From positions 1-64,000 of IMG/VR virus record IMGVR_UViG_3300045921_000730: a stretch of 64,000 nucleotides of DNA; one strand, written 5' to 3'. Every line of letters starts with the position of its first letter. The first letter of the stretch is position 1. This document shows, piece after piece, positions 9,965-63,746 of this stretch. The notes beneath the pieces were generated by a model. That model was not told where the DNA came from. It searched no databases and saw only the letters and a list, made by a program, of their open reading frames with translations. A program made the position numbers and the translations under genes.

Positions 9965-10034
9965 ACTGAACTACCACTTGTCTAACGAACAATAAATATT
10001 TCTATGTAAACGGAGAAGTTTTTAAGAGAAAAAA

Positions 10035-21194: not shown

Positions 21195-21582
21195 TAAATA
21201 AATCCTCACCAGACGGAGGTATTTATCACTTTTGGTTGATGGCACCCGAATCCCGCTTGTTCTTAAGAACAAGTGGTAGTTCAGCTTATTGTAGAATACG
21301 GACTTAACCTCTTGCTCACCCGTAAGAGTTATCATAAAAAACCTACATTTGTAGGATAACTAATTGTTTTTAACGACCTCGTCCTGTTTTACGAAACGTT
21401 TGTTGCTTTCTTTGGGGGAAGTTTGGATTGAACTTTTGAGGCAGTGTAGGTGGTGCCTTTTTTTGAGGTGGTGTCGGTTTGTTTGGTTTATTGTTACTCA
21501 TATGTTTCCCTCATAAAAAAATTATACACGCCCTGTTACTTCTTATTACGCATACAATGATCAAAATTTCAAAGAATGTGTT

Positions 21583-29889: not shown

Positions 29890-29953
29890 TTAATATACCT
29901 TTTATCGACTGCTGAACCTCTAAACAACAAGCAGTTTCCTTAATGTGAATATT

Positions 29954-30158
29954 ATGAACTACCGCGTAGCTAAAGACAACGCGGTTTCTGAACTCATCGA
30001 CCCAGCTAACATCACCGGCGCCTCCTTCGGTTTTTGTTTAGAGTCCGACTGCGTTCCACAACCAGACATTTTATTTATGACTACAAATTAATTAGATATC
30101 AATAGGCCAATTCATCCACGCGACTGAAGATCACGTGGTTTTCTCAGCCTTAAGTTTG
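29954..30158 (-). mobile_element. mini-element family A copy 1 (protein-free IS200/IS605-TnpB derivative, ~205 bp)
   Basis: TTTAT | CAAACTTAAGG..CCACGTGA-N7-TCGCGTGG (LE hairpin) ... CCGCGT-N11-ACGCGG-TAGTTCAT (RE); near-identical to six other copies. Confidence 0.9.
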
Positions 30159-34949: not shown

Positions 34950-35612
34950 TTAGTGACCAATCTTACCCTTAGCAAAGGCACTACCTTGTTGGGTGCCAAC
35001 GCCAAAACCAGATACAATATCACCAGGAGCAGTAGTTACACCCCAGTTGTTAACATGTGAAAACCCGTTGCTCGTTGCGGATGAAGTAGTGGACTTAGAT
35101 GGGGAAAGTGTATTCTTATAGTTGGAGTATGAATTATTCTCAGCTATACCGTAGCTGCCAGACACGGCATTGCCTGTGCCTATTACACCAGCACCACTCC
35201 CGGTGTTAACACCAACAAGAGACGTGTTATCAATTTTGCCACCATAATGTTCACCGTTTGTGTCAGTTACTGTGATTGAACCATTACCGGTTTGTTGACC
35301 AAAAGCACCAGCCCCGCCTTGTCCAATACCATTGGCCCAAGTAGTGGTGCTACCATTTGTATAGGCATATGTTGAACCACTGCCCTCATAATTACCAGCG
35401 TTGGCACTACCACCCACACCGGTTGTGTTCAATGCGGAACCACCGACGGAATGTGTACTGAAATCAACACCAGAACCAGAAATGTTTGATACGGAAAAAG
35501 AGCCTACAGAAACAGTTGCTGATGAAGTTACAGCAGCATTATAAGATGGACCTGTTGCCATTGCGGCACCAGCAAAACCAGAAATTACAACAGCAAGAAT
35601 CGTTTTATTCAT
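34950..35612 (-). CDS. secreted Gly/Ser/Thr/Asn-rich protein
   Basis: Signal peptide ending AMA-T; low-complexity beta-rich composition. Confidence 0.7.
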   Translation of the reverse strand: MNKTILAVVISGFAGAAMATGPSYNAAVTSSATVSVGSFSVSNISGSGVDFSTHSVGGSALNTTGVGGSANAGNYEGSGSTYAYTNGSTTTWANGIGQGGAGAFGQQTGNGSITVTDTNGEHYGGKIDNTSLVGVNTGSGAGVIGTGNAVSGSYGIAENNSYSNYKNTLSPSKSTTSSATSNGFSHVNNWGVTTAPGDIVSGFGVGTQQGSAFAKGKIGH

Positions 35613-35689
35613 ATTTTTTTCCTTTCAAAAAAGTTAAATTACTTATTCGTTCATTACTGAACTTGACAACAACTTACCACAGATCAAAA

Positions 35690-35891
35690 CTGGACTACTG
35701 CTTGTTCTTAAGAAGAAGCAGAGGTCACCTAATGACAACCGTGATTCCTGCTTCATCGTGGCATCTACTTCAGCCACTCCACAGGCGTAGATTCGGCCAG
35801 TCCCCAACCTATATATTTTATTTTTTTGTACTCATTTGTTGCAAAATGGGTTCTTAATTAAAATTATAACAGACTTTCATCCACTTGTCAA
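35690..35891 (-). ncRNA. family B omegaRNA-like cassette with perfect sigma70 promoter (copy 1)
   Basis: TTGACA-N17-TATAAT, then a tnpB-3'-end-like scaffold (GGACTGGCCGAATCTACGCCTGTGGAG...CAGGAATC) and RE hairpin ending TAGTCCAG; homologous to 40355-40551. Confidence 0.7.
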
Positions 35892-35979
35892 CAACAACTT
35901 GTCAATTTTTAATTATTCTTAACAAAAACTTACTTTCTGAGCCGAATTCCTTACAACAGAACTCGTATTTTCACAGACA

Positions 35980-36207
35980 TTAAATCCTTTGAACTACCGC
36001 TTGTCTAAAGAACAAGTAGCTTTCTTTGGTAGTATTTGTAAATTCATTAAGGTCAAAATCTGTTTTTTCAGACACACGAACTCGAACATTGTTCGTTTTA
36101 TTGACAAGATACCCCTGTCGAATTTCTTCAACAGACAAAGAATGTTTTGTAATAAAACGATAATATTTTGATTTTACAAGGAATTTTCGTTCAATTTCTA
36201 CGCCCAT
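35980..36207 (-). pseudogene. truncated CYTH-domain (adenylate cyclase/triphosphatase-like) gene
   Basis: MGVEIERKFLV..IRQGYL..VRVRV, then runs into an RE hairpin (35989-36020) and stops. Confidence 0.7.
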
Positions 36208-36247
36208 ATTGTATTTGTTTTTCTGTGAAAGACGATAAATAGTATAA

Positions 36248-37477
36248 TTATGTCGTTTTATAAAAATCAATAAAACTAACTAAACGCTTCAACGAGGATG
36301 CCTTAGGCATTTCTACCTTTGGTCTTAATTCCTCTCGACGTCTGTAATCGGCTAATTCGTCCGATGTAAATCCATAAAGATCGTCAAGACCTTTAAGTAA
36401 AATGTTCATTGCAGCATTCAAGTCTCGATCATGTAATGAACCACAAGACGGGCAGGTCCATTCTCTTACCGAGAGTTCCATGCTAGCCATCTTGTGACCA
36501 CAACATGAGCAAAGTTTTGAACTCGGATAGAAGGTGTCAATCTGTTGAAATGACCGACCATACCAGTTGCTCTTGTATGCAACCATAGACACAAAGGATG
36601 ACCAAGAAACATCTTGTATGGACTTAGCCAATCTGCGGTTCTTTACCATGCCCTTAACGTTCAGCTTTTCCATGCAAATGGTATCGTAGTTGTTCACTAA
36701 CCAAGTAGATAGATTATGGTAGAACCAGTTTCGTTGATTGGTTATTTTTTGATGGTTTTTAGCAACCTTGATTCTTTGCTTATTCCAACGATTTGACCCT
36801 TTAACCTTACGACTTAAATGCTGCTGTGCTCTTTTAAGTTTAGATTGGCTTTCTCTAAACCACCTTGGGTTTGAAATCTTCAGGCCATTACTCATGACTA
36901 TCAAGTCTTTCAACCCGAGATCAATACCGATAGAGCGACCGGTATTTGGTTTCAATTCTAGCTCTTCTTCAACTAGAACTGAAACAAAATACTGACCAGA
37001 AGGATTTCTTGAAATTGTCACTGATTTAGGGGCGCCATTGAATTTCCGATCAACCACCATCTTCATTGGAGACATTTTCGTGAGTTTGATTGTTCCAGCA
37101 TCTAAATCAAATGCCTTCATTCCACCCAATGATGCAGCAGGGATCCTAAACGAATCACGTGATTTCCCTTTGCATTTGAACTTCATCCGCCCAAGTTTAA
37201 CGGCTCGTTTCTTGTTGAAGAATTGCTTTTTGGTCTCATCAAAGTCCATTCGCCTTTGTTGCAAAGCATAACTGATGACTTCTTTTAGCCAAGGATATCT
37301 AGGATCGTCTTTCAAGGTCTTTTCAGTGACTGTTTGAGTTGGACCATCCTTAGACCAAGAATTAAAGTTGGCTACCAGTTGATTCCAGACGAATCGGACG
37401 CAACCAAAGTTCTGCAACAAGAATTGCTCTTGCTCTTTTGTTGGATACAGTCGGTATTTGTAAGCTCTTAGAATCAT
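36248..37477 (-). CDS. tnpB: TnpB nuclease (IS607-derived element lacking tnpA)
   Basis: LRAYKYRLYPT; RuvC GIDLG / MEKL / HDRDLNAA; Zn ribbon CSCCG..CPSCG. Start trimmed to MILRAYKY. Confidence 0.95.
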   Translation of the reverse strand: MILRAYKYRLYPTKEQEQFLLQNFGCVRFVWNQLVANFNSWSKDGPTQTVTEKTLKDDPRYPWLKEVISYALQQRRMDFDETKKQFFNKKRAVKLGRMKFKCKGKSRDSFRIPAASLGGMKAFDLDAGTIKLTKMSPMKMVVDRKFNGAPKSVTISRNPSGQYFVSVLVEEELELKPNTGRSIGIDLGLKDLIVMSNGLKISNPRWFRESQSKLKRAQQHLSRKVKGSNRWNKQRIKVAKNHQKITNQRNWFYHNLSTWLVNNYDTICMEKLNVKGMVKNRRLAKSIQDVSWSSFVSMVAYKSNWYGRSFQQIDTFYPSSKLCSCCGHKMASMELSVREWTCPSCGSLHDRDLNAAMNILLKGLDDLYGFTSDELADYRRREELRPKVEMPKASSLKRLVSFIDFYKTT

Positions 37478-37681
37478 TGAACCTGTATAAATAAAATCGT
37501 ATGGGACAGCCCAGTCACCTGTAGCTGAGGTTGGAGTTCCTGCTAAGAACTTCCTAACCATACATCTATTTATGCAAAAAGATATTTGGTCATCGCTTCT
37601 ATATAATTTTTACAGGAATTTTATAGTTGTTGATTGAAATGGAAATTTACATACAATATTGATACTTTAAGGAAGACAACG

Positions 37682-37873
37682 ATGAACATCAAACCTGAAA
37701 ACGAAACAGCCACACCAACACTTTCCCTAATCCAAAAATTACTTTCTTGGGTTGATAAGCCTTGGAAAGTTCTTGGGTTAATTATGATTGTTGTAGTTGT
37801 CGTTGGAACATATATTGTGTGGGAAAGCAGAGAAAAATTTGTTGACGCTATAATCGAAGTTATTAAAAATTAA
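37682..37873 (+). CDS. small membrane protein
   Basis: GGAAG RBS, one strong TM segment. Confidence 0.55.
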   Translation: MNIKPENETATPTLSLIQKLLSWVDKPWKVLGLIMIVVVVVGTYIVWESREKFVDAIIEVIKN

Positions 37874-37952
37874 GTTAAAATTTTCAAAAAAAGATGAATT
37901 AAACAAGCACATACAGACAAATTAATACTTCTGTGATTTGTCGTAAGCAGAA

Positions 37953-37985
37953 AAAAAGAGCAGAATTAATTCTGCTCTTTTTTCA
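37953..37985. terminator. bidirectional terminator
   Basis: AAAAAAAGAGCAGAATTAATTCTGCTCTTTTTT between convergent genes. Confidence 0.8.
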
Positions 37986-38264
37986 TTGGGTAAAATAACT
38001 TCAGCTTAGATTAGGGTAGAAGCCTTATAGCCATGGCTCTTCCAAAAAACACGGATCTTACCATTGCGTGCTACTTCTTGATCACGAATTGTAACAATCG
38101 ATTCAGTCTTACGAATCTTTGTTTGACCAAGAACACGAACACGAGCACCTGCCGGAATTGTAATTTGCTTGCCAATATAGTTCTTCATAATTTATTTCTC
38201 CTTATGTCTAATGTGTCATATATATGACACGACAAATTATATTACAGTTACATTTAAAAATCAA

Positions 38265-38471
38265 CTACTCTGGTTTGTACACAAATACAGTTGTACAATA
38301 CACATACCCATTTTCCACCCTTGTGCAGTGGCTAGACATTGGTGTTGAAGTTCCAACAAGATTTTGTGCTGCTTGAATGTTTTGTTGCTTCAAATCTCTA
38401 TCGCTAACTCCAACATCAAATTTACAACCGCTTAGTACCAACGCAATTGAACCCAAAATTAATCTTTTCAT
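38265..38471 (-). CDS. small lipoprotein
   Basis: Lipobox LSG-C. Confidence 0.6.
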   Translation of the reverse strand: MKRLILGSIALVLSGCKFDVGVSDRDLKQQNIQAAQNLVGTSTPMSSHCTRVENGYVYCTTVFVYKPE

Positions 38472-38568
38472 ATAATTACCACATTAAAACCTGATGTTGT
38501 TTAGACATGAGGATGAATTGTGGATTCCTCCTTTCTTCAATATATTCACACAAAAAATACCAACTTCT

Positions 38569-38774
38569 ATGAACTACCACGCAGTTAAAGACGACACGGT
38601 TTCCGAACTTATCGACCCAGCTAACATCACTGGTGCCTCCTTCGGTTTTTGTTTAATGTCCGACTGCGTCCCACAACCAGACATTATCATTTATAATCAT
38701 AAACCAATTAGATACCATTGTGTTGATTCGTCCATATGACTGAAGATCATGTGGTTTTCTCAACCTTAAAGACA
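38569..38774 (-). mobile_element. mini-element family A copy 2 (diverged), nested next to a left-end remnant of another TnpB family (38472-38525)
   Basis: Same architecture, TTTAT on the left and TAGTTCAT on the right. Confidence 0.88.
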
Positions 38775-38803
38775 ATAAAACTTCTATTTTTTTATTAGGG
38801 TTT

Positions 38804-39226
38804 TTATTCCTCTTTAAATTGTTCACAGATAGGATCTAACCACCCGCTTAACGTATCTTTATTCAATGCTAACATGAGCCGTTGTCCTTCATTGAGTGGT
38901 ATCTCGTCTTTAAACAAGTTAAAATAATCTCTGCATAAAATTTCTTGTTTTTCAACATCAAGATCATTTATGTCTACATAGCCATCGTTATCGTTTTCTT
39001 CTTCTCCGCTTTCGTTTATGAGATAACTAACGTAACGTTCTACCCAGAGTGTCGTTAAAGCATGGTCAAGATTAATAATTGCGTCTTTGTATTCTTTGCT
39101 AGTGTTCTTTAATTCTTCTACTTCTTCTAGCTGTTGAACTTGTTGATATGCAAAATAGCTGATAGAAACGGGCACAACAATGAATAGTACGCCAAGAGTC
39201 GTTAAAGCTATTTTACGAATGTTCAT
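38804..39226 (-). CDS. single-pass membrane protein
   Basis: N-terminal TM segment, acidic tail. Confidence 0.6.
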   Translation of the reverse strand: MNIRKIALTTLGVLFIVVPVSISYFAYQQVQQLEEVEELKNTSKEYKDAIINLDHALTTLWVERYVSYLINESGEEENDNDGYVDINDLDVEKQEILCRDYFNLFKDEIPLNEGQRLMLALNKDTLSGWLDPICEQFKEE

Positions 39227-39355
39227 TTTATTACTCCTTTTTCCAGTTACATAATCTATGTATTAAAAAATAGGTATGGGGAATCAATAATCAACGAATA
39301 GGTAATTTAACTTTTTTGTTGTGCCTATAATTTGAATTTATAATGTTTGAACTTG

Positions 39356-40279
39356 TTAAAATTTTCTTCCAAAGCCAATCATGAACAAATCTTGATCTCT
39401 GTTATAAAACGACGTAATTCTTGTAAATGTTCCACCAACAAAATAATCACCAAAATCTCTAACTATTCTGATAGAACCAGCCATCATTAGTTTTATTTGT
39501 TCAGTTGATCTTTTGTTATCAACAGCAAGATAAGGACCAATACCACCACTCAGTGTCCACTGTTCTGATGGCTTATAATCATACCAACCCTGAAAATACA
39601 TTCCAGTTCTATCAACAAGACCGGTATTACCTTCATAAAGTAAACCACCACCAAATGAAATGCGAGAAATGTTATACTGTTGTTTGATGTCTAACATCAC
39701 TGGTGTGGCATTTTTTTGTGTACCAATTTGTGTTGTACGAGAAGAACCTGACCAAACGCTCAAATATACTTTATCGAATACTTTTTCAGAATTGTTTACA
39801 GAATTATTCCAATCTTTACCAATACCAAACAATACACTATTTGAATTTGTGGTTGTCATTAAAATATTATTGTATTGAGCACGAAGATACCATCCATCTT
39901 GTAAATAATACTTAAGCGTTGCTGATGAAATTAAACCAACGTGGAAATCATTTAAACGATTTTCGTTTTGAAGTGTATTGTTGTTACTAATATATGGACC
40001 AGTACCAACTTGGTAATAAAGTGAATTCGTAATTTTGTCAGTATACCAGCCTTGTACAGCAAAGCCGTCCCTGTGATTATTTTCGCTGTGACCTTCGTTT
40101 AAGTAAGAAAACCCCACACCAAATTTATTGTTGATTTGTGAAATAAATCCGCTTTGTAATGTCCAAGTCGTATTAGGAGCATCAGCATTTTGTAAAGCAC
40201 CGCCTTGAAAATATACTTCACCACCATTAGCAAACGCTGTTGAACAAAACAATAATGGAAAAAGAGTTATGTATTTCAT
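39356..40279 (-). CDS. outer-membrane beta-barrel protein
   Basis: Signal peptide AFA-N; alternating amphipathic Gly/aromatic strands; C-terminal MIGFGRKF beta-signal. Confidence 0.75.
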   Translation of the reverse strand: MKYITLFPLLFCSTAFANGGEVYFQGGALQNADAPNTTWTLQSGFISQINNKFGVGFSYLNEGHSENNHRDGFAVQGWYTDKITNSLYYQVGTGPYISNNNTLQNENRLNDFHVGLISSATLKYYLQDGWYLRAQYNNILMTTTNSNSVLFGIGKDWNNSVNNSEKVFDKVYLSVWSGSSRTTQIGTQKNATPVMLDIKQQYNISRISFGGGLLYEGNTGLVDRTGMYFQGWYDYKPSEQWTLSGGIGPYLAVDNKRSTEQIKLMMAGSIRIVRDFGDYFVGGTFTRITSFYNRDQDLFMIGFGRKF

Positions 40280-40295
40280 GCACTTTCCTTTGATG

Positions 40296-40354
40296 TGGTG
40301 CTCTGTAGAGGAATCAAACCTCTGTAAGCTGTTTACGAAATAGCTATAATACTA
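40296..40354 (-). pseudogene. decayed tRNA-Thr(CGT) 3' remnant
   Basis: GCTAT-TTCGTAA-ACAGC arm, AGAGG-TTTGATT-CCTCT T-arm, ACAGAGC-ACCA. The 5' acceptor strand is replaced by the family B cassette. Confidence 0.55.
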
Positions 40355-40551
40355 CTGAACTACCACTTGTTCTTAAGAACAACTGGGGTCACCCAACGGT
40401 AACCTTGATTCCTGTTTCATTGTGGCATTTATTTCAGCCACTCTACAGGAGTAAATTCGGCCAGTTCCCAACCTATATGTTTTATTTGTTTCCATTTGTT
40501 GCAAAACGTGTTCCTAATTAAAATAATAACACACTTTCATCCACATGTCAA
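40355..40551 (-). ncRNA. family B omegaRNA-like cassette (copy 2)
   Basis: TTGACA-N17-TATTAT promoter, scaffold homologous to 35690-35891, RE TTGTTCTTAAGAACAAGTGGTAGTTCAG. Confidence 0.7.
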
Positions 40552-40580
40552 CAAGTAGGATTTGTGTGGATAGTACTAAG

Positions 40581-40812: not shown

Positions 40813-42240
40813 ATAAACTACCGCGTAGCTAAAGACAACGCGGTTTTCCTGCTCCCCATGTCAACTCCAAAAATGCTTGAAGATCTCTCGATTTTAGCGA
40901 CATGTTTTTGCAAGGACGTTGGGATCACTCCCACTTCGGGCATCTCACCCGAAGGAATAAGTTGATCATAGCAATCTAGCTGACCAAAGTTTTTAATGTT
41001 GATAGCAGCATTTAAGTCTCGATCATGTTCAGTACCACAACCAGGGCAATGCCATTCCCGAGTACCAAGATCAAGTTTCTCAAGTTTGTGCCCACAGCAC
41101 GAACACGTCTTGCTAGATGGAACAAACGGATCAATTTGATGGAATGTCCTACCAGCAGAGGCTGACTTGCAGGAAATCATGGAAACAAGCGTTGACCAAG
41201 CAGTTTCATGGATTTTTCTTGAGAGTTTTCTGTTCTTCAACATTCCAGAAGCATTCAAGTTCTCCATGTAAATGGTATCAAAGTTTTGAATCAAGTAGGA
41301 GCTAATGTTGTGGTAGTACCAATTTCTAATGTTGGCAATCTTCTCGTAGCACTTAGCTACTTTGATTCGTTGAGCTTCTCTGTTCTTACTGCCTTTAGTC
41401 TTTCTTGCTAAAATGCGCTGCTGCTTCTTAAGTGCTAACTTGGCTTTCGCTAGCATTGCTTCAGGATGTTGGAATTTGAGTCCGGTTGAAAGGACGCAGA
41501 GGTCCTTCAAACCAAGATCAATCCCCACTTCTTGCTCGGTAGAAGGTAGAACTGAAACATCTTCTTCTACCAAGATGGAAACAAAAAACTTACCTGACGG
41601 AGTCTTTGACACTGTAGCTGATTTGATGGTTCCTTCGAACTTTCTGTCTAGAGCAATCTTGACATTCTTGATCTTTGGTAACTTGACTGTGCTGTTCTCA
41701 AAATCAACTTTGACATCACGAGTCCTGTAGGACTGATAATTTGATTTAGACTTGAATCTGGGTGCTTGTAGCTTTGGACCTTTTCGTTTTCCGGTGATAG
41801 AATTTAAGAAGTTTTGGTATGCTGTGTGCAGGTCTTCGGCTGCATGTTTCAAACACCAGTCGTCAATTTCTCTGAGCCAAGCAGTTTCTGGTTGTTTCTT
41901 GAGTTGAGTAATCTGTACGTTGATGTCGTAGTTGTTCAGATGTTTTTCTTTGTTGGCAAATCGTTGTTTGTTTTCGTGGAGGTAATGGTTGAAAATCCAA
42001 CGCTTGGCACCAAAGAACTGTGTTAGCAGCGCCTCTTCTGCTTTGTTTGGATACAACCTATACTTGTATGCTCTTAATTCCACTTGACAAACCTTTGTTG
42101 TTCTGTTATAATCTATTTATGCTTTTTCATGTTTCGATATGACAATTTCAGGAGATTTTTCGATGTTGTTTGATCTAGATCAAAAACTTGACCAATTCAT
42201 CCACGCGACTAAAAATCACGTGGTTTCCTTGGTCTAATTG
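40813..42240 (-). mobile_element. tnpB: IS1341-like (tnpB-only) element with family A ends; tnpB CDS 40818..42083
   Basis: LE CCACGTGA-TTTTTAG-TCGCGTGGATGAA and RE CCGCGTTGTCTTTAGCTACGCGGTAG match family A; RuvC D/E/D intact; Zn ribbon present. Confidence 0.93.
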
Positions 42241-42448: not shown

Positions 42449-42654
42449 ATGAACTACCACGAAGCTAAAAACTTTATGGTTTCCGAGCTCATCGACTCGA
42501 CCTAACCGCATCGACGCCTCCTTCGGTTTTTGTTTAATGTCCGACTGCGTCCCACAACCAGACATTTTATTTATGACTACAAATTAATTAGATACCAATG
42601 TGCTGATTCATCCATGTGACTGAAGATCACGTGGTTTTCTCAACCTTAAGTTTG
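42449..42654 (-). mobile_element. mini-element family A copy 3 (most diverged)
   Basis: TTTAT...TAGTTCAT boundaries; compensatory stem changes. Confidence 0.88.
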
Positions 42655-42864
42655 ATAAATAAAAAACGACAACAACATTACTTATGTATACGTTTCAAAT
42701 ATGACAACACCCGAAAAACAGTATCTTAAATTTCCTCGTTTGTGTTTTGTATGTAAAAAAATTGTTCCTTATATACGGCGTGAAAAATATATTTGTAGTG
42801 AACAATGCGAGAAAAAATTTAACAAAAAAATAAAACTAAAAACAACTTTACGTTGTTGTGGTGG

Positions 42865-48469: not shown

Positions 48470-49711
48470 TTATAAAATCGCTGGACACTTCAACGAAGTA
48501 GCCAATGTCGTACCGACCACTGGTCTTAGCACTTCTCGATGTCTGTTCTCGACTGATTCGGCCGAGTTCAATTCTCTGTTGCCTCTTTTGATCCAGTTGA
48601 CCAGATCTCTAGAAGCTTCTTGTTCGATGTTCTTAGCAGCATTCAAGTCACGATCATGCACTGAACCACAAGATGGGCAGGTCCATTGACAGACATCTAG
48701 TGATTTCTTTCCATCATGATGACCACAAGTAGAACAAACTTGACTAGAAGCAAAGTAACGATCAACCTTGGCAAATTCCTTACCATACCAATCACATTTG
48801 TAGCTGATCTTAGTGACCAGTGAAGACCAACTCGCATCTGCAATGTTCTTGTTTCGAGTCTTATTTTTAGACTGCATCATCTCTTGAACAGCTAGATCTT
48901 CAAGATAGATGTAGTCGTAGTTCTCGACAAGCCACTTAGAAAACTCATGTTGCAGGTGTTCTCGTCGGTTGGTGATTTTCAAATAGATACGATTGACCTT
49001 CAGCTGCTGTCTCTTACGACGATTGCTTCCCTTTTGTTTGCGACTCAAATGCTGTTGTGCTTTCTTCAGTTTCACTTGGCTTTCGTGAAACCATCTTGGA
49101 TTAGTTAGTCTATGGCCGTCACTAAGAACGGCTAGATCAGCTAGACCAAGATCAATACCTACAGCATGATAGGTATTTGGTAAAGGTTCTGGTTTTGCTT
49201 CTTCAACCAGAACTGAAACAAAATACTGACCAGAAGGGTTTCTTGAAACTGTCACTGATTTAGGTATTCCATTGAATTTCCTGTCAACAACCATCTTCAT
49301 TGGAGTCATCTTTGGGATGACAATTTGACCAGTCTCGCACATCTCAAGATTTGCTTTTGGAAGCACAGAACCAGGAATCCTAAACGAATCTCGTGATTTC
49401 CCTTTGCATTTGAACTTCATTCGGCCAAGTTTAACTGCTCGTTTCTTGTTGAAGAATTGCTTCTTGGCCTCTTCAAAGTCCATTCGTTTTTGTTGCAAAG
49501 CGTAGCTAATGACTTCTTTCAACCAAGGATATCTAGGATCGTCTTTCAAGGTCTTTTCTGTGACCGTCTGAACTGGTTTGTCCTTAGACCAAGAATTGAA
49601 GTTAGCTACAAGTTGGTTCCAAACAAAGTGGACTGCACCAAAGTTTTGTAGCAAGAATTGCTCTTGCTCTTTGGTTGGATATAACCGATACTTGTATGCT
49701 CTTAGGACCAT
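48470..49711 (-). CDS. tnpB: TnpB nuclease of an IS607-family element
   Basis: RuvC GIDLG / LEDL / HDRDLNAA, Zn ribbon; lies downstream of a tnpA fragment. Confidence 0.95.
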   Translation of the reverse strand: MVLRAYKYRLYPTKEQEQFLLQNFGAVHFVWNQLVANFNSWSKDKPVQTVTEKTLKDDPRYPWLKEVISYALQQKRMDFEEAKKQFFNKKRAVKLGRMKFKCKGKSRDSFRIPGSVLPKANLEMCETGQIVIPKMTPMKMVVDRKFNGIPKSVTVSRNPSGQYFVSVLVEEAKPEPLPNTYHAVGIDLGLADLAVLSDGHRLTNPRWFHESQVKLKKAQQHLSRKQKGSNRRKRQQLKVNRIYLKITNRREHLQHEFSKWLVENYDYIYLEDLAVQEMMQSKNKTRNKNIADASWSSLVTKISYKCDWYGKEFAKVDRYFASSQVCSTCGHHDGKKSLDVCQWTCPSCGSVHDRDLNAAKNIEQEASRDLVNWIKRGNRELNSAESVENRHREVLRPVVGTTLATSLKCPAIL

Positions 49712-49722
49712 TTGACTAATCT

Positions 49723-50022
49723 TTATTGGTTTTTACTATTTATACTTTCTTTGATTTCCAACTCCTTGATTAGTTGCTCCGTCTTTCTCTTACTTCTTCG
49801 TTGGCCATAAATCCTAGCACTAAAGGAAGTGATGATAGAGACAAAGTCCTGAATCAAATCTTCCTTTTCGTCTTGAACACAATTCACTACTTCAATTTCA
49901 ATTCCGTTTTTCTTCAGCAAGATTTCTAAGTAGTTGGAGAATGTTTGAACATCAGCGGACGGCTGTCCACCATATGGATGACCAACAAACGTTGTTTCTC
50001 TTAAAAATTTAATAAAATTCAT
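49723..50022 (-). pseudogene. IS607 serine-recombinase TnpA C-terminal fragment fused to an unrelated phage N-terminus
   Basis: NYLEILLKKNGIEIEVVN..EDLIQDFVSIITSFSARIYGQRRSK; HTH and catalytic Ser region absent; N-terminus MNFIKFLRE. Confidence 0.8.
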
Positions 50023-51425
50023 ATAATTCCCGCAAGGAAACCTAATGTTCTTTAGACGTCAGGATGAATTGCGGACCTTTCATTAGTTAAATTGAAAAAT
50101 TCTAACTTATATAAATAATAGTATATAGTAATTCAAATTTATTGTCAAGTGAATCAGCTTAGAGCCTACAAATATCGCCTTTATCCAACCAAAGATCAAG
50201 AGCAAATTCTAGCTCAATTCTTTGGTGCTAAACGTTGGGTCTTCAACCATTTTCTTCACGAAAACAAACAACGATTTGCTAACAAAGAAAAACATCTGAA
50301 CAATTACGACATCAACGTACAGATTACCCAACTCAAGAAACAACCAGAAACTGCATGGCTTCGTGAAATCGATGATTGGTGTTTGAAACATGCAGCCGTA
50401 GATCTGCACACAGCATACCAAAACTTCTTCAAGTCCATAACAGGAAAACGAAAAGGACCAAAGCTACAAGTGCCTAAATACATGTCTAAAGACTCACGTC
50501 AGTCCTATAGGACTAGAGGCGTTAAAGTTGACATTGAGAACAGCACAGTCAAGTTACCTAAGATCAAGAATGTTAAGGTTGTTATTCACCGCAAATTCAT
50601 CGGAACTATCAAATCCGCTACAATCTCTAAGAACCCTGATGGTCAGTATTACATTTCAGTTCTAGTTGAAGAAGATATCAAGTCTTTACCATCAACCAAA
50701 ACCGAAATTGGTATTGATCTTGGAATTAAGGACTTGCTCATATTGAGCAATGGTGTCAAGTTTCAACATCCCAAGAAAATGCTAGAGAAAGCCAATCTAG
50801 CATTGAAGAAGCAGCAAAAGAAACTAGCAAGAAAGACGAAAAGCAGTAATAACCGAGCTAAACAAAGAACTAAGGTAGCTAGAGCGTATGCTAGGATATC
50901 TAGAATCCGCAACAACTACTATCATGAGATTTCGACGTATCTGGTTAGAAACTTCGATGCCATCTACATGGAAAATCTAAACGTGAAGAGCATACTTCAA
51001 AATAGGAAACTTTCACGAGCAATTCATGAAGCATCTTGGTCTACATTAGTCTCTATGATCTCCTACAAGTGCAATTTCTACGCCAGACCTTTCCACCAAA
51101 TAGATCGCTTTGCCGCTTCTTCAAAAACATGCTCATGTTGTGGTCACGAATTAGAGAAACTTGATCTAGGAACCAGAGATTGGACTTGCCCATCATGTGG
51201 TGCCCAGCACGATCGAGATATCAATGCTGCCATCAACATCAAAAACCTTGGTCAAATAGATCTTTATGACCAACTAATTCCTTCGGGTGCAACAACCGAA
51301 GTGGGATCTTCGATCCCAAAGGCTCTAGTGAAATGGACTACTAAAACCGAGAGGTCTCCAAGTGTTTTTGGAGTTAGTCCAGGGACGGAGCAAGCAAGAC
51401 GTTCTTTAGACGTCTAGTAGTTGAC
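50023..51425 (+). mobile_element. tnpB: IS1341-like (tnpB-only) element; tnpB CDS 50149..51417
   Basis: TTCAT | ATAATTCCCGC..CCTAATGTTCTTTAGACGTCAGGATGAA left end; RuvC D/E/D; RE AGACGTTCTTTAGACGTCTAGTAGTTGAC. Confidence 0.93.
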
Positions 51426-54620: not shown

Positions 54621-54639
54621 TACAAATCAAAAACGAAAT

Positions 54640-54844
54640 ATGAACTACCGCGTAGCTAAAGACAACGCGGTTTCCGAACTCATCGACCCAGCTAACATCA
54701 CCGGCGCCTCCTTCGGTTTTTGTTTAGAGTCCGACTGCGTTCCACAACCAGACATTTTATTTATGACTACAAATTAATTAGATACCAATAGGCCGATTCA
54801 TCCATGTGATTGAAGATCACGTGGTTTTCTCAGCCTTAAGTTTG
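54640..54844 (-). mobile_element. mini-element family A copy 4
   Basis: TTTAT...TAGTTCAT boundaries; differs from copy 5 at 2 nt. Confidence 0.92.
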
Positions 54845-54851
54845 ATAAAAA

Positions 54852-55446: not shown

Positions 55447-55651
55447 ATAAACTACCGCGTAGCTAAAGACAACGCGGTTTCTGAACTCATCGACCCAGCT
55501 AACATCACCGGCGCCTCCTTCGGTTTTTGTTTAGAGTCCGACTGCGTTCCACAACCAGACATTTTATTTATGACTACAAATTAATTAGATACCAATAGGC
55601 CGATTCATCCATGTGATTGAAGATCACGTGGTTTTCTCAGCCTTAAGTTTG
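55447..55651 (-). mobile_element. mini-element family A copy 5
   Basis: TTTAT left boundary; RE variant TAGTTTAT. Confidence 0.92.
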
Positions 55652-55808
55652 ATAAAACAAAATGTCACCGCAAGCACCGCTTGTCTATCCACGTGGGTTT
55701 AAAATGGACATAAAAGTTAACGCCAGTTGTATTTTTGATGAAAATTGTGTAAACTACGGTCATGTAATAAATGTTGTGTTTGATAAATTGAAGAAAGAAG
55801 TGGACAAC

Positions 55809-59161: not shown

Positions 59162-59369
59162 AAGGAGAAAAACTATGTTAGGATTTATTACTGGTGTTGT
59201 TGTTGGTGTTGTTGTTGGTGCAGCATTTGCACCATTTTGGATTAAAGTTTTTAATACTGGAAAACAAAAGGTAGAAAAAATTTTTGAAAAGAAAAACTAG
59301 TTGTCTTTTAAAAACAATTTATATATGATTCTGCTGTGTACTAATATACGGCAGAATCAATTTTTTTAT

Positions 59370-59574
59370 CAAACTTAAGGCTGAGAAAACCACGTGATCT
59401 TCAGTCACGTGGATGAATCAGCACATTGGTATCTAATTAATTTGTAGTCATAAATAAAATGTCTGGTTGTGGAACGCAGTCGGACTCTAAACAAAAACCG
59501 AAGGAGGCGCCGGTGATGTTAGCTGGGTCGATGAGTTCGGAAACCGCGTTGTCTTTAGCTACGCGGTAGTTCAT
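59370..59574 (+). mobile_element. mini-element family A copy 6
   Basis: TTTAT | CAAAC... perfect LE hairpin CCACGTGA/TCACGTGG ... TAGTTCAT; follows a terminator hairpin at ~59328-59359. Confidence 0.92.
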
Positions 59575-59613
59575 AAATTTGTGTGATTTAAAAGATAAAG
59601 GTTTAAAATCAAA

Positions 59614-61675: not shown

Positions 61676-63005
61676 TCAATTCAAGAAAACCTGATGTTCT
61701 TTAGACGTCAGGATGAATTGAATTTTTTAGTCCTCTTGAGTTTCAATATACCGTTTAATTGTCTCACTATTATATAAATAATATATGACAAAGGTATTTA
61801 TATAAAATGTTCATCAGACAAAATTACAGAATATATCCTAACAAAGAGCAGACCTCAATTCTGAACCAATGGCTTGGTCAGGGTAGATATATTTGGAATT
61901 TCATGTTAACCAAGAACATAGAAACATACCAAGAAACTAAAAAGTTTATTTTTGAAATAGACATGAATAATCTTCTACCTGGTTTGAAACGGCAAGAAGA
62001 AACATCTTGGTTAAAAGAAATACCAGCACAATGTTTACAACAGAAGTGTCAAGATTTGTCACAAGCATTAAAACAGTCTTTTAAGACAAATAAAAGCAAA
62101 AAGGGATTTCCAAAATTTAAGTCAAAAAAGACTGATGAATCTGGCATCAGATTCCCATCATTCAAATTTGAGGGTGACAGGATCAAGTTACCTAAAATGT
62201 CACAAGGAATCAAAATTAAGTTACATCGTGATTTGCTTGGGAAGAAATCATCAGTTACTATATTTCGAGATAAAACCGGAGTCTTCTGGGCATCTATACT
62301 TGTTTCTATTGATGATGTTGTCCCAACGAACACTATTTCTAATGTGGTAGGTATTGATGTCGGATTAAAAGAATTCGCGGTCACATCAGACGCTGAAATA
62401 ATCAAAAACCCGAAATTTCTAAAAAGAACGGCAAAGAAACTAGCAAAAGCTCAAGCAAAACATAGTAGAAAAGAAAAAGGTTCGTCAAACAAAGAAAAAC
62501 AAAGAATTAAAGTTGCAAAAATTTACAGAAAAATAAGCAATCAACGTAAAGATTTTATCAATCAAGTTGCTAGTTCGATAGGCAAGACAAACGACTTGAT
62601 TGTAGTTGAAAATCTCAATGTAAAAGGTATGATGAAAAATCCTAACCTAGCTAAATCTATTTCAGATGTTAGTTGGGGAATGTTTTTATCCGCTTTAAAG
62701 TGGCATTGTAAGAAACGGGGCAAACACTTCGTTGAGATTTCACAATGGTATCCTTCAAGCAAAATGTGTTCATGTTGTGGAAATAAAAAATCAGATTTGT
62801 CCTTGAGCGACAGAACATACGAATGTAAAGAATGTGGTTTCACGATGGATAGAGATTTAAATGCTGCCATTAACATTCTGAAAGAAGGTATCAACCTTTT
62901 CAATACCGTAGGAACTACGGAAATTAACGCCTGTGGAGATATGAGTTCTGAAGTAGGGAACTCAGCCCAGGAAGCTAGTTGTTCTTTAGACAACTAGCAG
63001 TTCAC
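61672..63005 (+). mobile_element. tnpB: IS1341-like (tnpB-only) element; tnpB CDS 61807..62997
   Basis: TTTAT | ATAATC..CCTGATGTTCTTTAGACGTCAGGATGAA left end; GIDVG / VENL / DRDLNAA; RE CTAGTTGTTCTTTAGACAACTAGCAGTTCAC. Confidence 0.93.
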
Positions 63006-63108: not shown

Positions 63109-63139
63109 TTGACTGAATACTTAAAATCGACTATAAATA
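63109..63139 (+). promoter_or_regulatory. sigma70-like promoter for ssrA; its -10 doubles as a T4-type TATAAATA box
   Basis: TTGACT-N17-TATAAA(TA). Confidence 0.75.
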
Positions 63140-63144
63140 TATAT

Positions 63145-63412
63145 GTTAGTGAGTAATCACTGACAATGAGTGTATGAAGCAATCTGTAGACGGGCAAGAC
63201 ACGAGTTCGAATCTCGTCGCCTCCACAAATATTAACTCATGGGGGCGTTATGGAATCGATTGACGGGCGAAGGAAAGTGGACACTTCGAGAGACGACTGA
63301 CGTAATCAGCGTAAAACCTTAAATGCAAACGATGCATTTTATAATGAGGAATTCCGCCTAGCAGCGTAAACCTCAGGGGGAGCGTAGATTCCTTCTTACC
63401 CAACATCTACCG
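63145..63412 (+). ncRNA. ssrA: circularly permuted (two-piece) tmRNA
   Basis: The T-arm and 3' acceptor strand (CACGAGTTCGAATCTCGTCGCCTCCA, to 63225) precede the 5' strand GGGGGCG (63241). G3-U70 pair present. Tag ORF 63325-63369 ANDAFYNEEFRLAA*. Outer ends approximate. Confidence 0.9.
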
Positions 63413-63440
63413 AAAGGACAGTCTTAAGACTGTCCTTTTT
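63413..63440 (+). terminator. intrinsic terminator of ssrA
   Basis: AAAGGACAGTC-TTAA-GACTGTCCTTT followed by a T run. Confidence 0.85.
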
Positions 63441-63448
63441 GTTTTTAT

Positions 63449-63654
63449 CATCTTCAGGGCTGAGAAAACCACGTGATCTTCAGTCGCGTGGATGAATCAG
63501 CCCATTGGTATCTAATTAATTTGTAGTCATAAATAGTAATGTCTGGTTGTGGGACGCAGTCGGACTCTAAACAAAAACCGAAGGAGGCGCCGGTGATGTT
63601 AGCTGGGTCGATGAGTTCGGAAACCGCGTTGTCTTTAGCTACGCGGTAGTTCAT
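63449..63654 (+). mobile_element. mini-element family A copy 7
   Basis: TTTAT...TAGTTCAT boundaries. Confidence 0.92.
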
Positions 63655-63746
63655 TTTAAATTTTTCTCTCTTAATGAAACCCATTTCCGCATATTAAAAG
63701 CAGATATTATTTTCAGCTGTAAATACTCAAAAAAAGGAGTGTTAAA

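What the first reader, a model, noticed from the sequence alone, without database searches (positions are those of the whole stretch)
35690..40551. Second family (B) of stand-alone omegaRNA-like cassettes under a consensus sigma70 promoter
SEEN: 35690-35891 and 40355-40551 (minus) are homologous. Each has TTGACA-N17-TATAAT/TATTAT, a short AT-rich leader, a scaffold resembling the 3' end of tnpB 61807-62997 (GGAACT..GAA(T/A)T.AC.CCTGT.GAG..GTGGC/GCCAC hairpin..CAGGAA) and an RE hairpin ending TAGT(T/C)CAG. No protein is encoded. The left-end hairpin is degenerate, although the LE-type GTGGATGAA motif sits inside the promoter spacer. Predicted spacers: TTTTGATCTGTGGTAAGTTG and TAGTATTATAGCTATTTCGT. 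INFERRED: immobilised, strongly (probably early) expressed guides, possibly domesticated by the phage.
Basis: partly seen in the sequence, partly recalled or inferred. Interest (0 to 1): 0.7.

Follow-up and report, generated by a model that had tools for sequence, protein, structure and literature searches.

The report
TnpB-less mini-transposons carrying guide RNAs
The two cassettes are real copies of a miniature, protein-less derivative of a TnpB insertion sequence that keeps the parent's promoter and guide-RNA scaffold, a known kind of element, and nothing shows that this hot-spring jumbo phage has put them to its own use.

Summary
B1 (35690-35895, minus) and B2 (40355-40575, minus) are about 84% identical over about 205 nt, and the homology stops exactly at TAGTYCAG. 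Each has TTGACA-N17-TATAAT/TATTAT with an extended -10 TG. Each also has an intact omegaRNA-type scaffold.

The parent lies outside the window. It is an intact ISDra2-like tnpB (T7, 233859-235040) whose 3' end is 88-90% identical to the B scaffolds. Its left end and 5'UTR align with the B promoter and leader, and T7 carries TAGACA-N17-TAGAAT at the same place. B1 and B2 are therefore left end + omegaRNA + right end deletion derivatives, comparable to PATE elements.

The genome holds seven intact tnpB genes and many such mini-elements of other subfamilies. PATEs that encode omegaRNAs used in trans are already described.

Domestication is not supported:
- B1 is absent from a strain-level variant.
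- B2 diverges about five times faster than its flanks in a 99.4%-identical relative.
- More distant relatives of the downstream gene lack the cassette.
- Neither guide matches anything except its own flank.

Expression and TnpB binding could not be tested. I file this as a new member of a known kind, of modest interest.

The parts
35690..35895 (-). B1 mini-element: left-end remnant with promoter, leader, omegaRNA scaffold and right end. It has no ORF of its own.
   Evidence: 84% identical to B2. The scaffold is 88% identical to the T7 tnpB 3' end. The 5' part aligns with the T7 left end and 5'UTR. Positions 35692-35886 are missing from a contig of run X7.
35863..35891 (-). B1 sigma70-type promoter: TTGACA (35891-35886), 17-nt spacer holding GTGGATGAA, TG, TATAAT (35868-35863).
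   Evidence: 12/12 match. One of 5 perfect sites in 244 kb. The -35 overlaps the loop and 3' stem of the left-end hairpin.
35690..35814 (-). B1 omegaRNA scaffold: five stems, ending AGTAGTCCAG at the right-end boundary.
   Evidence: 32 of the 33 base pairs of the T7 scaffold are kept, with 2 double compensatory changes. Sub-threshold RAGATH-18 match, 34.8 bits. Fold z = -0.87, with the fourth stem weak.
35670..35689 (-). B1 predicted guide, TTTTGATCTGTGGTAAGTTG. It is the flanking DNA, which is the 5'UTR of gene 34950-35612.
   Evidence: Assigned from its position directly 3' of the right end. The only exact match in the genome is itself. No match in viral contigs.
40355..40575 (-). B2 mini-element, including about 20 nt of left end upstream of the -35.
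   Evidence: Present in runs X1, X5 and X7 and in L072/L073.
40523..40551 (-). B2 promoter: TTGACA-N17-TATTAT with TG.
   Evidence: 11/12 match. Unchanged in L072/L073.
40355..40478 (-). B2 omegaRNA scaffold.
   Evidence: 90.5% identical to the T7 scaffold. All five stems appear in the minimum-energy fold, z = -3.86. 32 of 33 pairs kept.
40335..40354 (-). B2 predicted guide, TAGTATTATAGCTATTTCGT. It is the flank, which is the 5'UTR of gene 39356-40279.
   Evidence: Assigned from position. No other match was found.
34950..35612 (-). Gene downstream of B1: 220 aa, signal-peptide-like N-terminus, rich in Gly/Ser/Thr. It would be read from the B1 promoter.
   Evidence: ORF list. No family match. 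No intrinsic-terminator-like site between the B1 right end and this gene.
39356..40279 (-). Gene downstream of B2: 307 aa, outer-membrane beta-barrel family. It would be read from the B2 promoter.
   Evidence: Homologues include a Bdellovibrio outer-membrane beta-barrel protein and a weak PF13505 hit. Relatives lack the cassette.
36244..37655 (-). T1: an unrelated tnpB element (tnpB 36248-37561) just upstream of B1. It is a recent insertion.
   Evidence: Pfam. Exactly 36244-37655 is skipped in X7, and a larger stretch is skipped in X5. 33% identical to T7.
40813..42223 (-). T2: an unrelated tnpB element (tnpB 40818-42083) upstream of B2, with its own left and right ends.
61807..63005 (+). T5: the tnpB in the window with the same omegaRNA superfamily (scaffold 62899-63005).
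   Evidence: 41% identical to T7.

Best explanation
B1 and B2 are non-autonomous mini-elements, comparable to PATE or MITE elements. They derive from an ISDra2-like, tnpB-only insertion sequence whose full-length copy (T7) lies at 233.8-235.06 kb of the same phage genome.

Origin. One internal deletion removed the tnpB ORF and fused two parts. The first is the left end with its promoter and 5'UTR. The second is the last ~136 nt of the element, which is the complete omegaRNA scaffold plus the right end. The resulting ~205-nt unit then came to occupy two loci with unrelated flanks.

Proposed mechanism, step by step:
1. The left-end promoter fires. The sequence is consensus; activity is inferred.
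2. The transcript carries a leader, the scaffold and about 16-20 nt of flank as guide, then runs on into the next gene. Inferred; no terminator-like site was seen.
3. T7 TnpB binds and trims the RNA in trans. T7 is the only cognate protein, and its RuvC D-E-D residues and zinc finger are intact. Binding is inferred from known TnpB biology.
4. The complex cuts genomes that carry the same flank next to a TAM but lack the element, such as co-infecting relatives or excision products. Recombinational repair then copies the element back. Inferred.

The benefit goes to the element, not the phage. A side effect is a strong promoter placed in front of two secreted or outer-membrane protein genes.

The confidence of 0.7 is for the whole statement. 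The identity as a deletion-derived mini-element is near certain. Continued trans use of the RNA by T7 TnpB is about even odds.
For: - Parentage: the scaffold is 88% (B1) and 90.5% (B2) identical to the T7 3' end. The promoter and leader align with the T7 left end and 5'UTR, which has TAGACA-N17-TAGAAT at the same place. B1 and B2 share the same fusion junction.
- The same architecture recurs in other subfamilies of this genome. One copy at 99524-99757 is 99-100% identical to T5. There are also 12 or more T6-type copies.
- Scaffold integrity: 32 of 33 pairs are kept in each cassette, with compensatory changes. B2 folds at z = -3.86. The core matches RAGATH-18, the reRNA of IS607-type TnpB (PMC11061315).
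- Partner protein: T7 is a close homologue of ISDra2 TnpB (8EXA/8H1J, E = 2.5e-59) with catalytic residues intact.
- Polymorphism: B1 is absent from an X7 contig, while a filled form is also present there. The neighbouring T1 element is absent from X5 and X7.
- Precedent: PATEs 'often encode omegaRNAs' that TnpB acts on in trans (PMC10055086). Homing into co-infecting phages has been discussed (PMC13565253).
Against: - No Y1 TnpA and no serine recombinase domain is found in the 244-kb record, which is 72% complete. How the elements move is therefore open.
- The left-end hairpins look crippled. The B2 loop is shortened and the B1 5' stem is mismatched.
- The B1-less allele is not a clean empty site. 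Its left break falls inside the left-end hairpin, and 3 extra bases sit at the joint.
- B1 does not fold better than shuffled sequence (z = -0.87).
- B2 diverges faster than its flanks, which fits decay as well as selfish turnover.
- Transcription, TnpB binding and the TAM are all untested.
Confidence: 0.7

Rival explanations
1. Inert relics plus a mobile promoter. The cassettes are decaying remnants whose omegaRNA no longer serves any TnpB. Their only effect is that the retained left-end promoter now drives the downstream secreted or outer-membrane protein genes.
For: - B2 carries 5 of the 17 mismatches in 2.9 kb (p about 0.01).
- The fourth copy, B4, is clearly decayed (z = +0.34, 4 broken pairs).
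- The left-end hairpins are degenerate, and no transposase was found.
- In a relative at 80% identity, the outer-membrane protein gene has its own TTGACA-N17-TATAAT just upstream. A strong promoter at this position is therefore what the gene normally has.
Against: - After about 16% divergence, both copies still keep 32 of 33 scaffold pairs, including two double compensatory changes.
- The deletion kept just the full scaffold length.
- The cognate TnpB is intact in the same genome.
Confidence: 0.22
2. Domesticated guide-RNA genes. The phage keeps promoter-driven orphan guides to aim a TnpB at host or rival DNA for its own benefit.
For: - The promoters are consensus and are the best-conserved segment between B1 and B2 (29/32).
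- The hexamers and guides are unchanged in L072/L073.
- The B1 guide matches the antisense strand of tnpB T2 at 17/20 and of T4 at 16/20.
Against: - The guides are simply the flanking DNA. No other target was found in the genome or in viral contigs.
- The T2/T4 match has mismatches at guide positions 2 and 11. About 0.015 such hits are expected per guide assuming equal base frequencies (my estimate, not a tool output), and AT-rich sequence would raise that; seven guides were tried.
- B1 is polymorphic.
- The position is not conserved in relatives.
- The promoter is inherited from the parent left end.
Confidence: 0.06
3. A cis-regulatory 5'UTR structure (riboswitch or leader) of the downstream genes, unrelated to TnpB.
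For: Both cassettes lie in the 5' region of genes on the same strand. Both are structured.
Against: - 86-90% identity to the 3' end of an intact tnpB.
- No Rfam cis-regulatory family matches them.
- The two downstream genes are unrelated to each other.
- Homologues of the downstream gene lack the structure.
Confidence: 0.02

Closest known systems
PATE-like non-autonomous IS200/IS605 elements that encode omegaRNAs (Geobacillus stearothermophilus; Meers et al. 2023, PMC10055086)
   Same: Left end and right end of a parent insertion sequence, no ORF, a retained omegaRNA that must use a TnpB encoded elsewhere, and several subfamilies in one genome.
   Different: These sit in a jumbo phage rather than a bacterial chromosome. 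They carry a consensus sigma70 promoter with an extended -10. No TnpA was seen in the record. The left-end hairpins are partly degenerate.
ISDra2 TnpB-omegaRNA (PDB 8EXA, 8H1J)
   Same: The cognate protein T7 is a close homologue (E = 2.5e-59). The RNA overlaps the tnpB 3' end and takes its guide from the flank beyond the right end.
   Different: In B1 and B2 the protein gene is deleted and the RNA has its own transcription start. The TAM is unknown.
RAGATH-18-derived reRNA of IS607-type TnpB (RF03064; PMC11061315)
   Same: The core CCUGUGGAG ... hairpin ... GAUGAAGCAGGAA is shared.
   Different: Scores fall below the gathering threshold (34.8 and 31.1 bits against 44.9). The inner hairpin is much shorter. 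The element ends carry IS200/IS605-style hairpins.
TldR-guide RNA repressors (TnpB-derived, nuclease-dead; PMC13622181)
   Same: A guide RNA of TnpB origin.
   Different: All seven TnpBs here keep D-E-D. No promoter-proximal target other than the flank itself was found.

Membership tests
TnpB omegaRNA / reRNA | Homologous to the 3' end of a tnpB gene plus the non-coding stretch up to the right end | tested here: met
   86-88% by BLAST, or 88-90.5% in the alignment, to the T7 tnpB 3' end. The same superfamily appears in T5, L006, L007, L022 and L024.
TnpB omegaRNA / reRNA | Conserved multi-stem scaffold ending in a hairpin next to the guide | tested here: met
   32 of 33 pairs kept in both B1 and B2. 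B2 z = -3.86 and B3 z = -3.15. B1 is weaker at z = -0.87. The first two stems covary across distant relatives.
TnpB omegaRNA / reRNA | Reaches the curated Rfam threshold (RAGATH-18, RF03064) | tested here: not met
   B1 scores 34.8 bits and T7's own scaffold 31.1 bits against a gathering score of 44.9. B2 was not listed. Since the tnpB-linked copy also fails, the model does not cover this subfamily.
TnpB omegaRNA / reRNA | Transcribed and bound by a TnpB; guides TAM-dependent cleavage | not testable with these tools
   No RNA run was listed. The complex prediction was not folded.
PATE / MITE-like derivative of IS200/IS605-type elements | Both ends of a parent element, fused, with no transposase or TnpB ORF | tested here: met
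   The 5' part aligns with the T7 left end and 5'UTR, and the 3' part with the T7 right end. The only ORF is a 54-aa frame with a TTG start.
PATE / MITE-like derivative of IS200/IS605-type elements | Copies at different loci with unrelated flanks | tested here: met
   B1 and B2 flanks are at random identity. The downstream genes are unrelated. B4 and solo right-end hairpins lie elsewhere.
PATE / MITE-like derivative of IS200/IS605-type elements | Clean empty site in a related genome | tested here: inconclusive
   An X7 contig lacks 35692-35886. However, the left break lies inside the left-end hairpin and 3 bases are inserted at the joint.
PATE / MITE-like derivative of IS200/IS605-type elements | Cognate transposase available | tested here: not met
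   No PF01797 and no PF00239 match in the 244-kb record, which is 72% complete. Only a truncated IS607-type tnpA tail remains at 49723-50022.
Domesticated guide RNA (TldR-like or CRISPR-like use) | Guide matches a target other than its own flank | tested here: not met
   Own genome: only 17/20 and 16/20 matches, inside T2 and T4. Viral contigs: none. Host genomes were not searched.
Domesticated guide RNA (TldR-like or CRISPR-like use) | Position conserved in related genomes and under purifying selection | tested here: not met
   B1 is polymorphic. Relatives at 80-49% identity lack B2. B2 shows 2.3% divergence against 0.45% in its flanks.
Sigma70-type promoter | Consensus hexamers with 17-nt spacing | tested here: met
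   12/12 and 11/12, both with TG. Genome-wide, 31 sites reach 11/12 or better, against 16 +/- 3.4 in shuffles. Activity was not tested.

The most novel reading that the evidence does not exclude
The promoter-armed orphan omegaRNAs may be guide-only homing cassettes. One TnpB (T7) would be loaded in trans with guides from several protein-less mini-elements. It would cut co-infecting relatives that lack a given cassette, so that each roughly 200-nt element, together with the adjacent outer-membrane or secreted-protein gene, is copied across by repair. That would be an RNA-guided counterpart of free-standing homing endonucleases in T-even phages, working without any transposase in the phage.
Probability: 0.15. 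Interest if true: 0.65.

Novelty: new member of a known kind. Interest (0 to 1): 0.33.

Why it matters
Two practical points follow. First, 'stand-alone guide RNA genes' in a phage can arise simply by internal deletion of a TnpB insertion sequence. The strong promoter is an inherited left-end feature, not a sign of recruitment. Second, the genome is a dense natural example: seven intact tnpB genes and dozens of mini-elements in 244 kb, no transposase found, and insertion polymorphism among strains in hot-spring mats. That makes it a useful system for asking whether TnpB with trans-acting omegaRNAs can drive homing between co-infecting phages.

Tried and rejected
- RNA evidence: no RNA run was listed for the locus.
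- TnpB-RNA complex prediction: the job was not folded and is not evidence either way.
- Exact-pattern scans for the scaffold, the promoter, the fusion junction, the B1 flank and both guides found nothing in viral and/or metagenome contigs.
- Searching viral contigs for relatives of the 307-aa protein confirmed no relative.
- I guessed that ORF 35980-36270 was a CYTH protein from its EIERKFLV start. Pfam and PHROGs gave nothing, so I dropped it.
- Functional coupling of B1 to T1 and of B2 to T2: rejected. T1 is absent from X5 and X7, T1 and T2 are only 33-34% identical to T7, and each has its own right end.
- Segmental duplication of 'promoter + gene': rejected. The flanks and the downstream proteins are unrelated.
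- TTGAC as the TAM, with the left end starting after it: considered because the X7 break falls there. Judged unlikely, because the hairpin that resembles the right-end hairpin spans that point. In the T5 subfamily the equivalent hairpin lies inside the element.
- The B1 guide match to T2/T4: probably chance.
- Searching the 288-kb assembly of the same phage for TnpA: the record is not held.


Full report
CONTEXT

The window is the first 64 kb of a 244,293-bp IMG/VR viral record. CheckV estimates it at 72% complete. The same phage appears as a 288-kb contig in another JGI sample, 100% identical over 16.6 kb. Runs that hold it come from hot-spring and microbial-mat metagenomes. The window also carries three tRNAs and a permuted tmRNA.

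THE OBSERVATION

Read on the minus strand, 35895-35690 (B1) and about 40575-40355 (B2) align at 84% identity. The homology starts at TTGTTGACA and ends at TAGT(C/T)CAG. By segment, identity is 29/32 in the promoter, 38/44 in the leader and 105/124 in the scaffold. The 60 nt on either side are at random level.

The promoter scan scores B1 at 12/12 and B2 at 11/12, both with TG before the -10. Genome-wide, 31 sites reach 11/12 or better, against 16 +/- 3.4 in shuffles. This suggests the phage uses this promoter type, and B1 is one of five perfect sites.

WHAT THE CASSETTES ARE

A search of the whole genome finds two more copies.
- B3 (234923-235058) is the 3' end of an intact 393-aa tnpB, which I call T7.
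- B4 (201897-202021) is a decayed copy.

T7 is a close homologue of ISDra2 TnpB (8EXA/8H1J, E = 2.5e-59). It keeps the RuvC D-E-D residues and the zinc finger, as do all seven tnpB genes in the genome.

The B1 and B2 scaffolds are 88% and 90.5% identical to T7's, which is closer than they are to each other at 83%. Upstream of the scaffold, the B promoter and leader align with T7's left end and 5'UTR. T7 has TAGACA-N17-TAGAAT exactly where B1 and B2 have TTGACA-N17-TATAAT/TATTAT. The -35 lies in the loop and 3' stem of the left-end hairpin, and the GGATGAA-type motif follows that hairpin, as it does in the other left ends of this genome.

B1 and B2 share one fusion junction. They therefore descend from a single deletion that removed the tnpB ORF and kept the last ~136 nt, which is about one complete scaffold.

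The same architecture recurs in other subfamilies. A copy at 99524-99757 is 99-100% identical to T5's left end and last 161 nt. Shorter ones sit at about 136.5 kb and 160.0 kb. A T6-type unit of about 120-210 nt occurs at least 12 times at 80-97% identity, with seven copies in the window.

Elements of this kind are known. [quoted passage not shown]

RNA FEATURES

On the five-stem structure of the T7 scaffold (33 pairs):
- B1 keeps 32 pairs, with two double compensatory changes in the terminal hairpin and one break.
- B2 keeps 32 pairs.
- B4 keeps 29 pairs.

B2 and B3 fold clearly better than shuffles (z = -3.86 and -3.15). B1 does not (z = -0.87), and B4 is decayed (z = +0.34).

The first two stems covary in relatives from other viral contigs and from cellular genomes. 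For example, CCGUAG/CUACGG replaces GGCUGG/CUGGCC, and CUUG/CAAG replaces CCUG/CAGG.

The core matches Rfam RAGATH-18 below threshold. B1 scores 34.8 bits and T7 31.1 bits, against a gathering score of 44.9. RAGATH-18 RNAs are the guide RNAs of IS607-type TnpB (PMC11061315).

TESTS OF DOMESTICATION

1. Population data. In run X7, from another sample, one contig joins 35691 to 35887 with three extra bases, so it lacks B1. Short contigs of the filled form are also present there. The left break falls just after TTGAC, inside the left-end hairpin. This is a loss or an imprecise excision, not a clean empty site.
2. The neighbouring T1 element (36244-37655) is skipped in X7, and a larger stretch is skipped in X5. 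The adjacency of B1 to T1 is therefore recent and incidental.
3. B2 is present in X1, X5 and X7 and in the 99.4%-identical contigs L072/L073. Yet 5 of the 17 mismatches in 2.9 kb fall in its 221 nt. That is 2.3% against 0.45% elsewhere, with Poisson p about 0.01 (my calculation on the counts). The hexamers and the guide are unchanged.
4. The 307-aa protein downstream of B2 belongs to an outer-membrane beta-barrel family. Its homologues at 80, 64, 56 and 49% identity have no cassette upstream. The 80% relative has its own TTGACA-N17-TATAAT.
5. The two guides are simply the flanking DNA. The only near match in the genome is 17/20 (T2) and 16/20 (T4), on the antisense strand of those tnpB genes, with mismatches at guide positions 2, 11 and 18. 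I estimate about 0.015 such hits per guide by chance assuming equal base frequencies (AT-rich sequence would raise that), and seven guides were tried. Neither guide occurs in viral contigs.

WHAT REMAINS OPEN

- No Y1 TnpA and no serine recombinase domain is found in the record. Only a truncated IS607-type tnpA tail remains next to T3, interrupted by T4. The source of mobility is unknown. It could be a host TnpA, the missing part of the genome, or recombination-based homing as discussed in PMC13565253.
- Transcription and TnpB binding could not be tested.
- The TAM is undefined.

VERDICT

The cassettes are TnpB-less mini-elements that retain the promoter, the omegaRNA and the right end of a T7-type insertion sequence. 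I think it plausible, at roughly even odds, that they still load T7 TnpB in trans for their own maintenance. They also place a strong promoter in front of two envelope or secreted protein genes. Nothing found here indicates recruitment by the phage.

Noticed in passing
window 29953-30082, 38565-38770, 42449-42660, 54639-54849, 55447-55656, 59365-59579, 63443-63660: At least seven copies in the window, and 12 or more in the genome, of a 120-210-nt mini-element. It is built from the left end and the last ~118 nt (omegaRNA plus right end) of the T6-type tnpB. Copies are 80-97% identical.
   Followed up: partly
window 63118-63441: A phage-encoded permuted (two-piece) tmRNA of betaproteobacterial type. 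It sits about 110 nt beyond the right end of tnpB T5 and overlaps or is flanked by a T6-type mini-element.
   Followed up: no
window 48470-51417: Nested insertion. tnpB T3 is preceded by only the C-terminal tail of an IS607-type TnpA (49723-50022). The divergently oriented T4 element appears to have cut that TnpA.
   Followed up: partly
window 42084-42112 (+) and 50148-50120 (-): Perfect or near-perfect sigma70-type promoters lie on the strand opposite to tnpB T2 and T4. They overlap or abut the start codons and point outward through the left end.
   Followed up: no
window 41666-41685 (+) and 50569-50550 (-): The B1 guide matches the antisense strand of tnpB T2 (17/20) and T4 (16/20), in the codons for the LPKIKNVK motif. 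The 5 nt upstream are GACAT and AACAT. Probably chance.
   Followed up: partly
L003 1637-1675 (genome 235059-235097); tRNA-Ala at L003 47-119: The predicted guide of the intact T7 element looks by eye like the 3' half of a tRNA (T-arm plus acceptor strand). ARAGORN calls no tRNA there, and a motif search (GTCGGTG) found no candidate 5' half within 3 kb. The element may have cut a tRNA gene in a tRNA cluster.
   Followed up: partly
window 9966-9990 (-), 21254-21286 (+), 35990-36016 (-): Solo ~30-nt hairpins of B/T7 type that end in GGTAGTTCA(G). They may be footprints or minimal remnants of further elements. Contigs in X7 break at 35988-35990.
   Followed up: partly
window 36110-37646 and 36244-37655: Two different T1-less forms exist in related strains. 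X7 skips exactly the T1 element. X5 skips a larger stretch that also removes the start of ORF 35980-36270.
   Followed up: no
window 39356-40279 (-) and 34950-35612 (-): The phage encodes an outer-membrane beta-barrel family protein and a Gly/Ser/Thr-rich protein with a signal-peptide-like N-terminus. Only an identical copy of the second was found among 5.8 billion proteins.
   Followed up: partly
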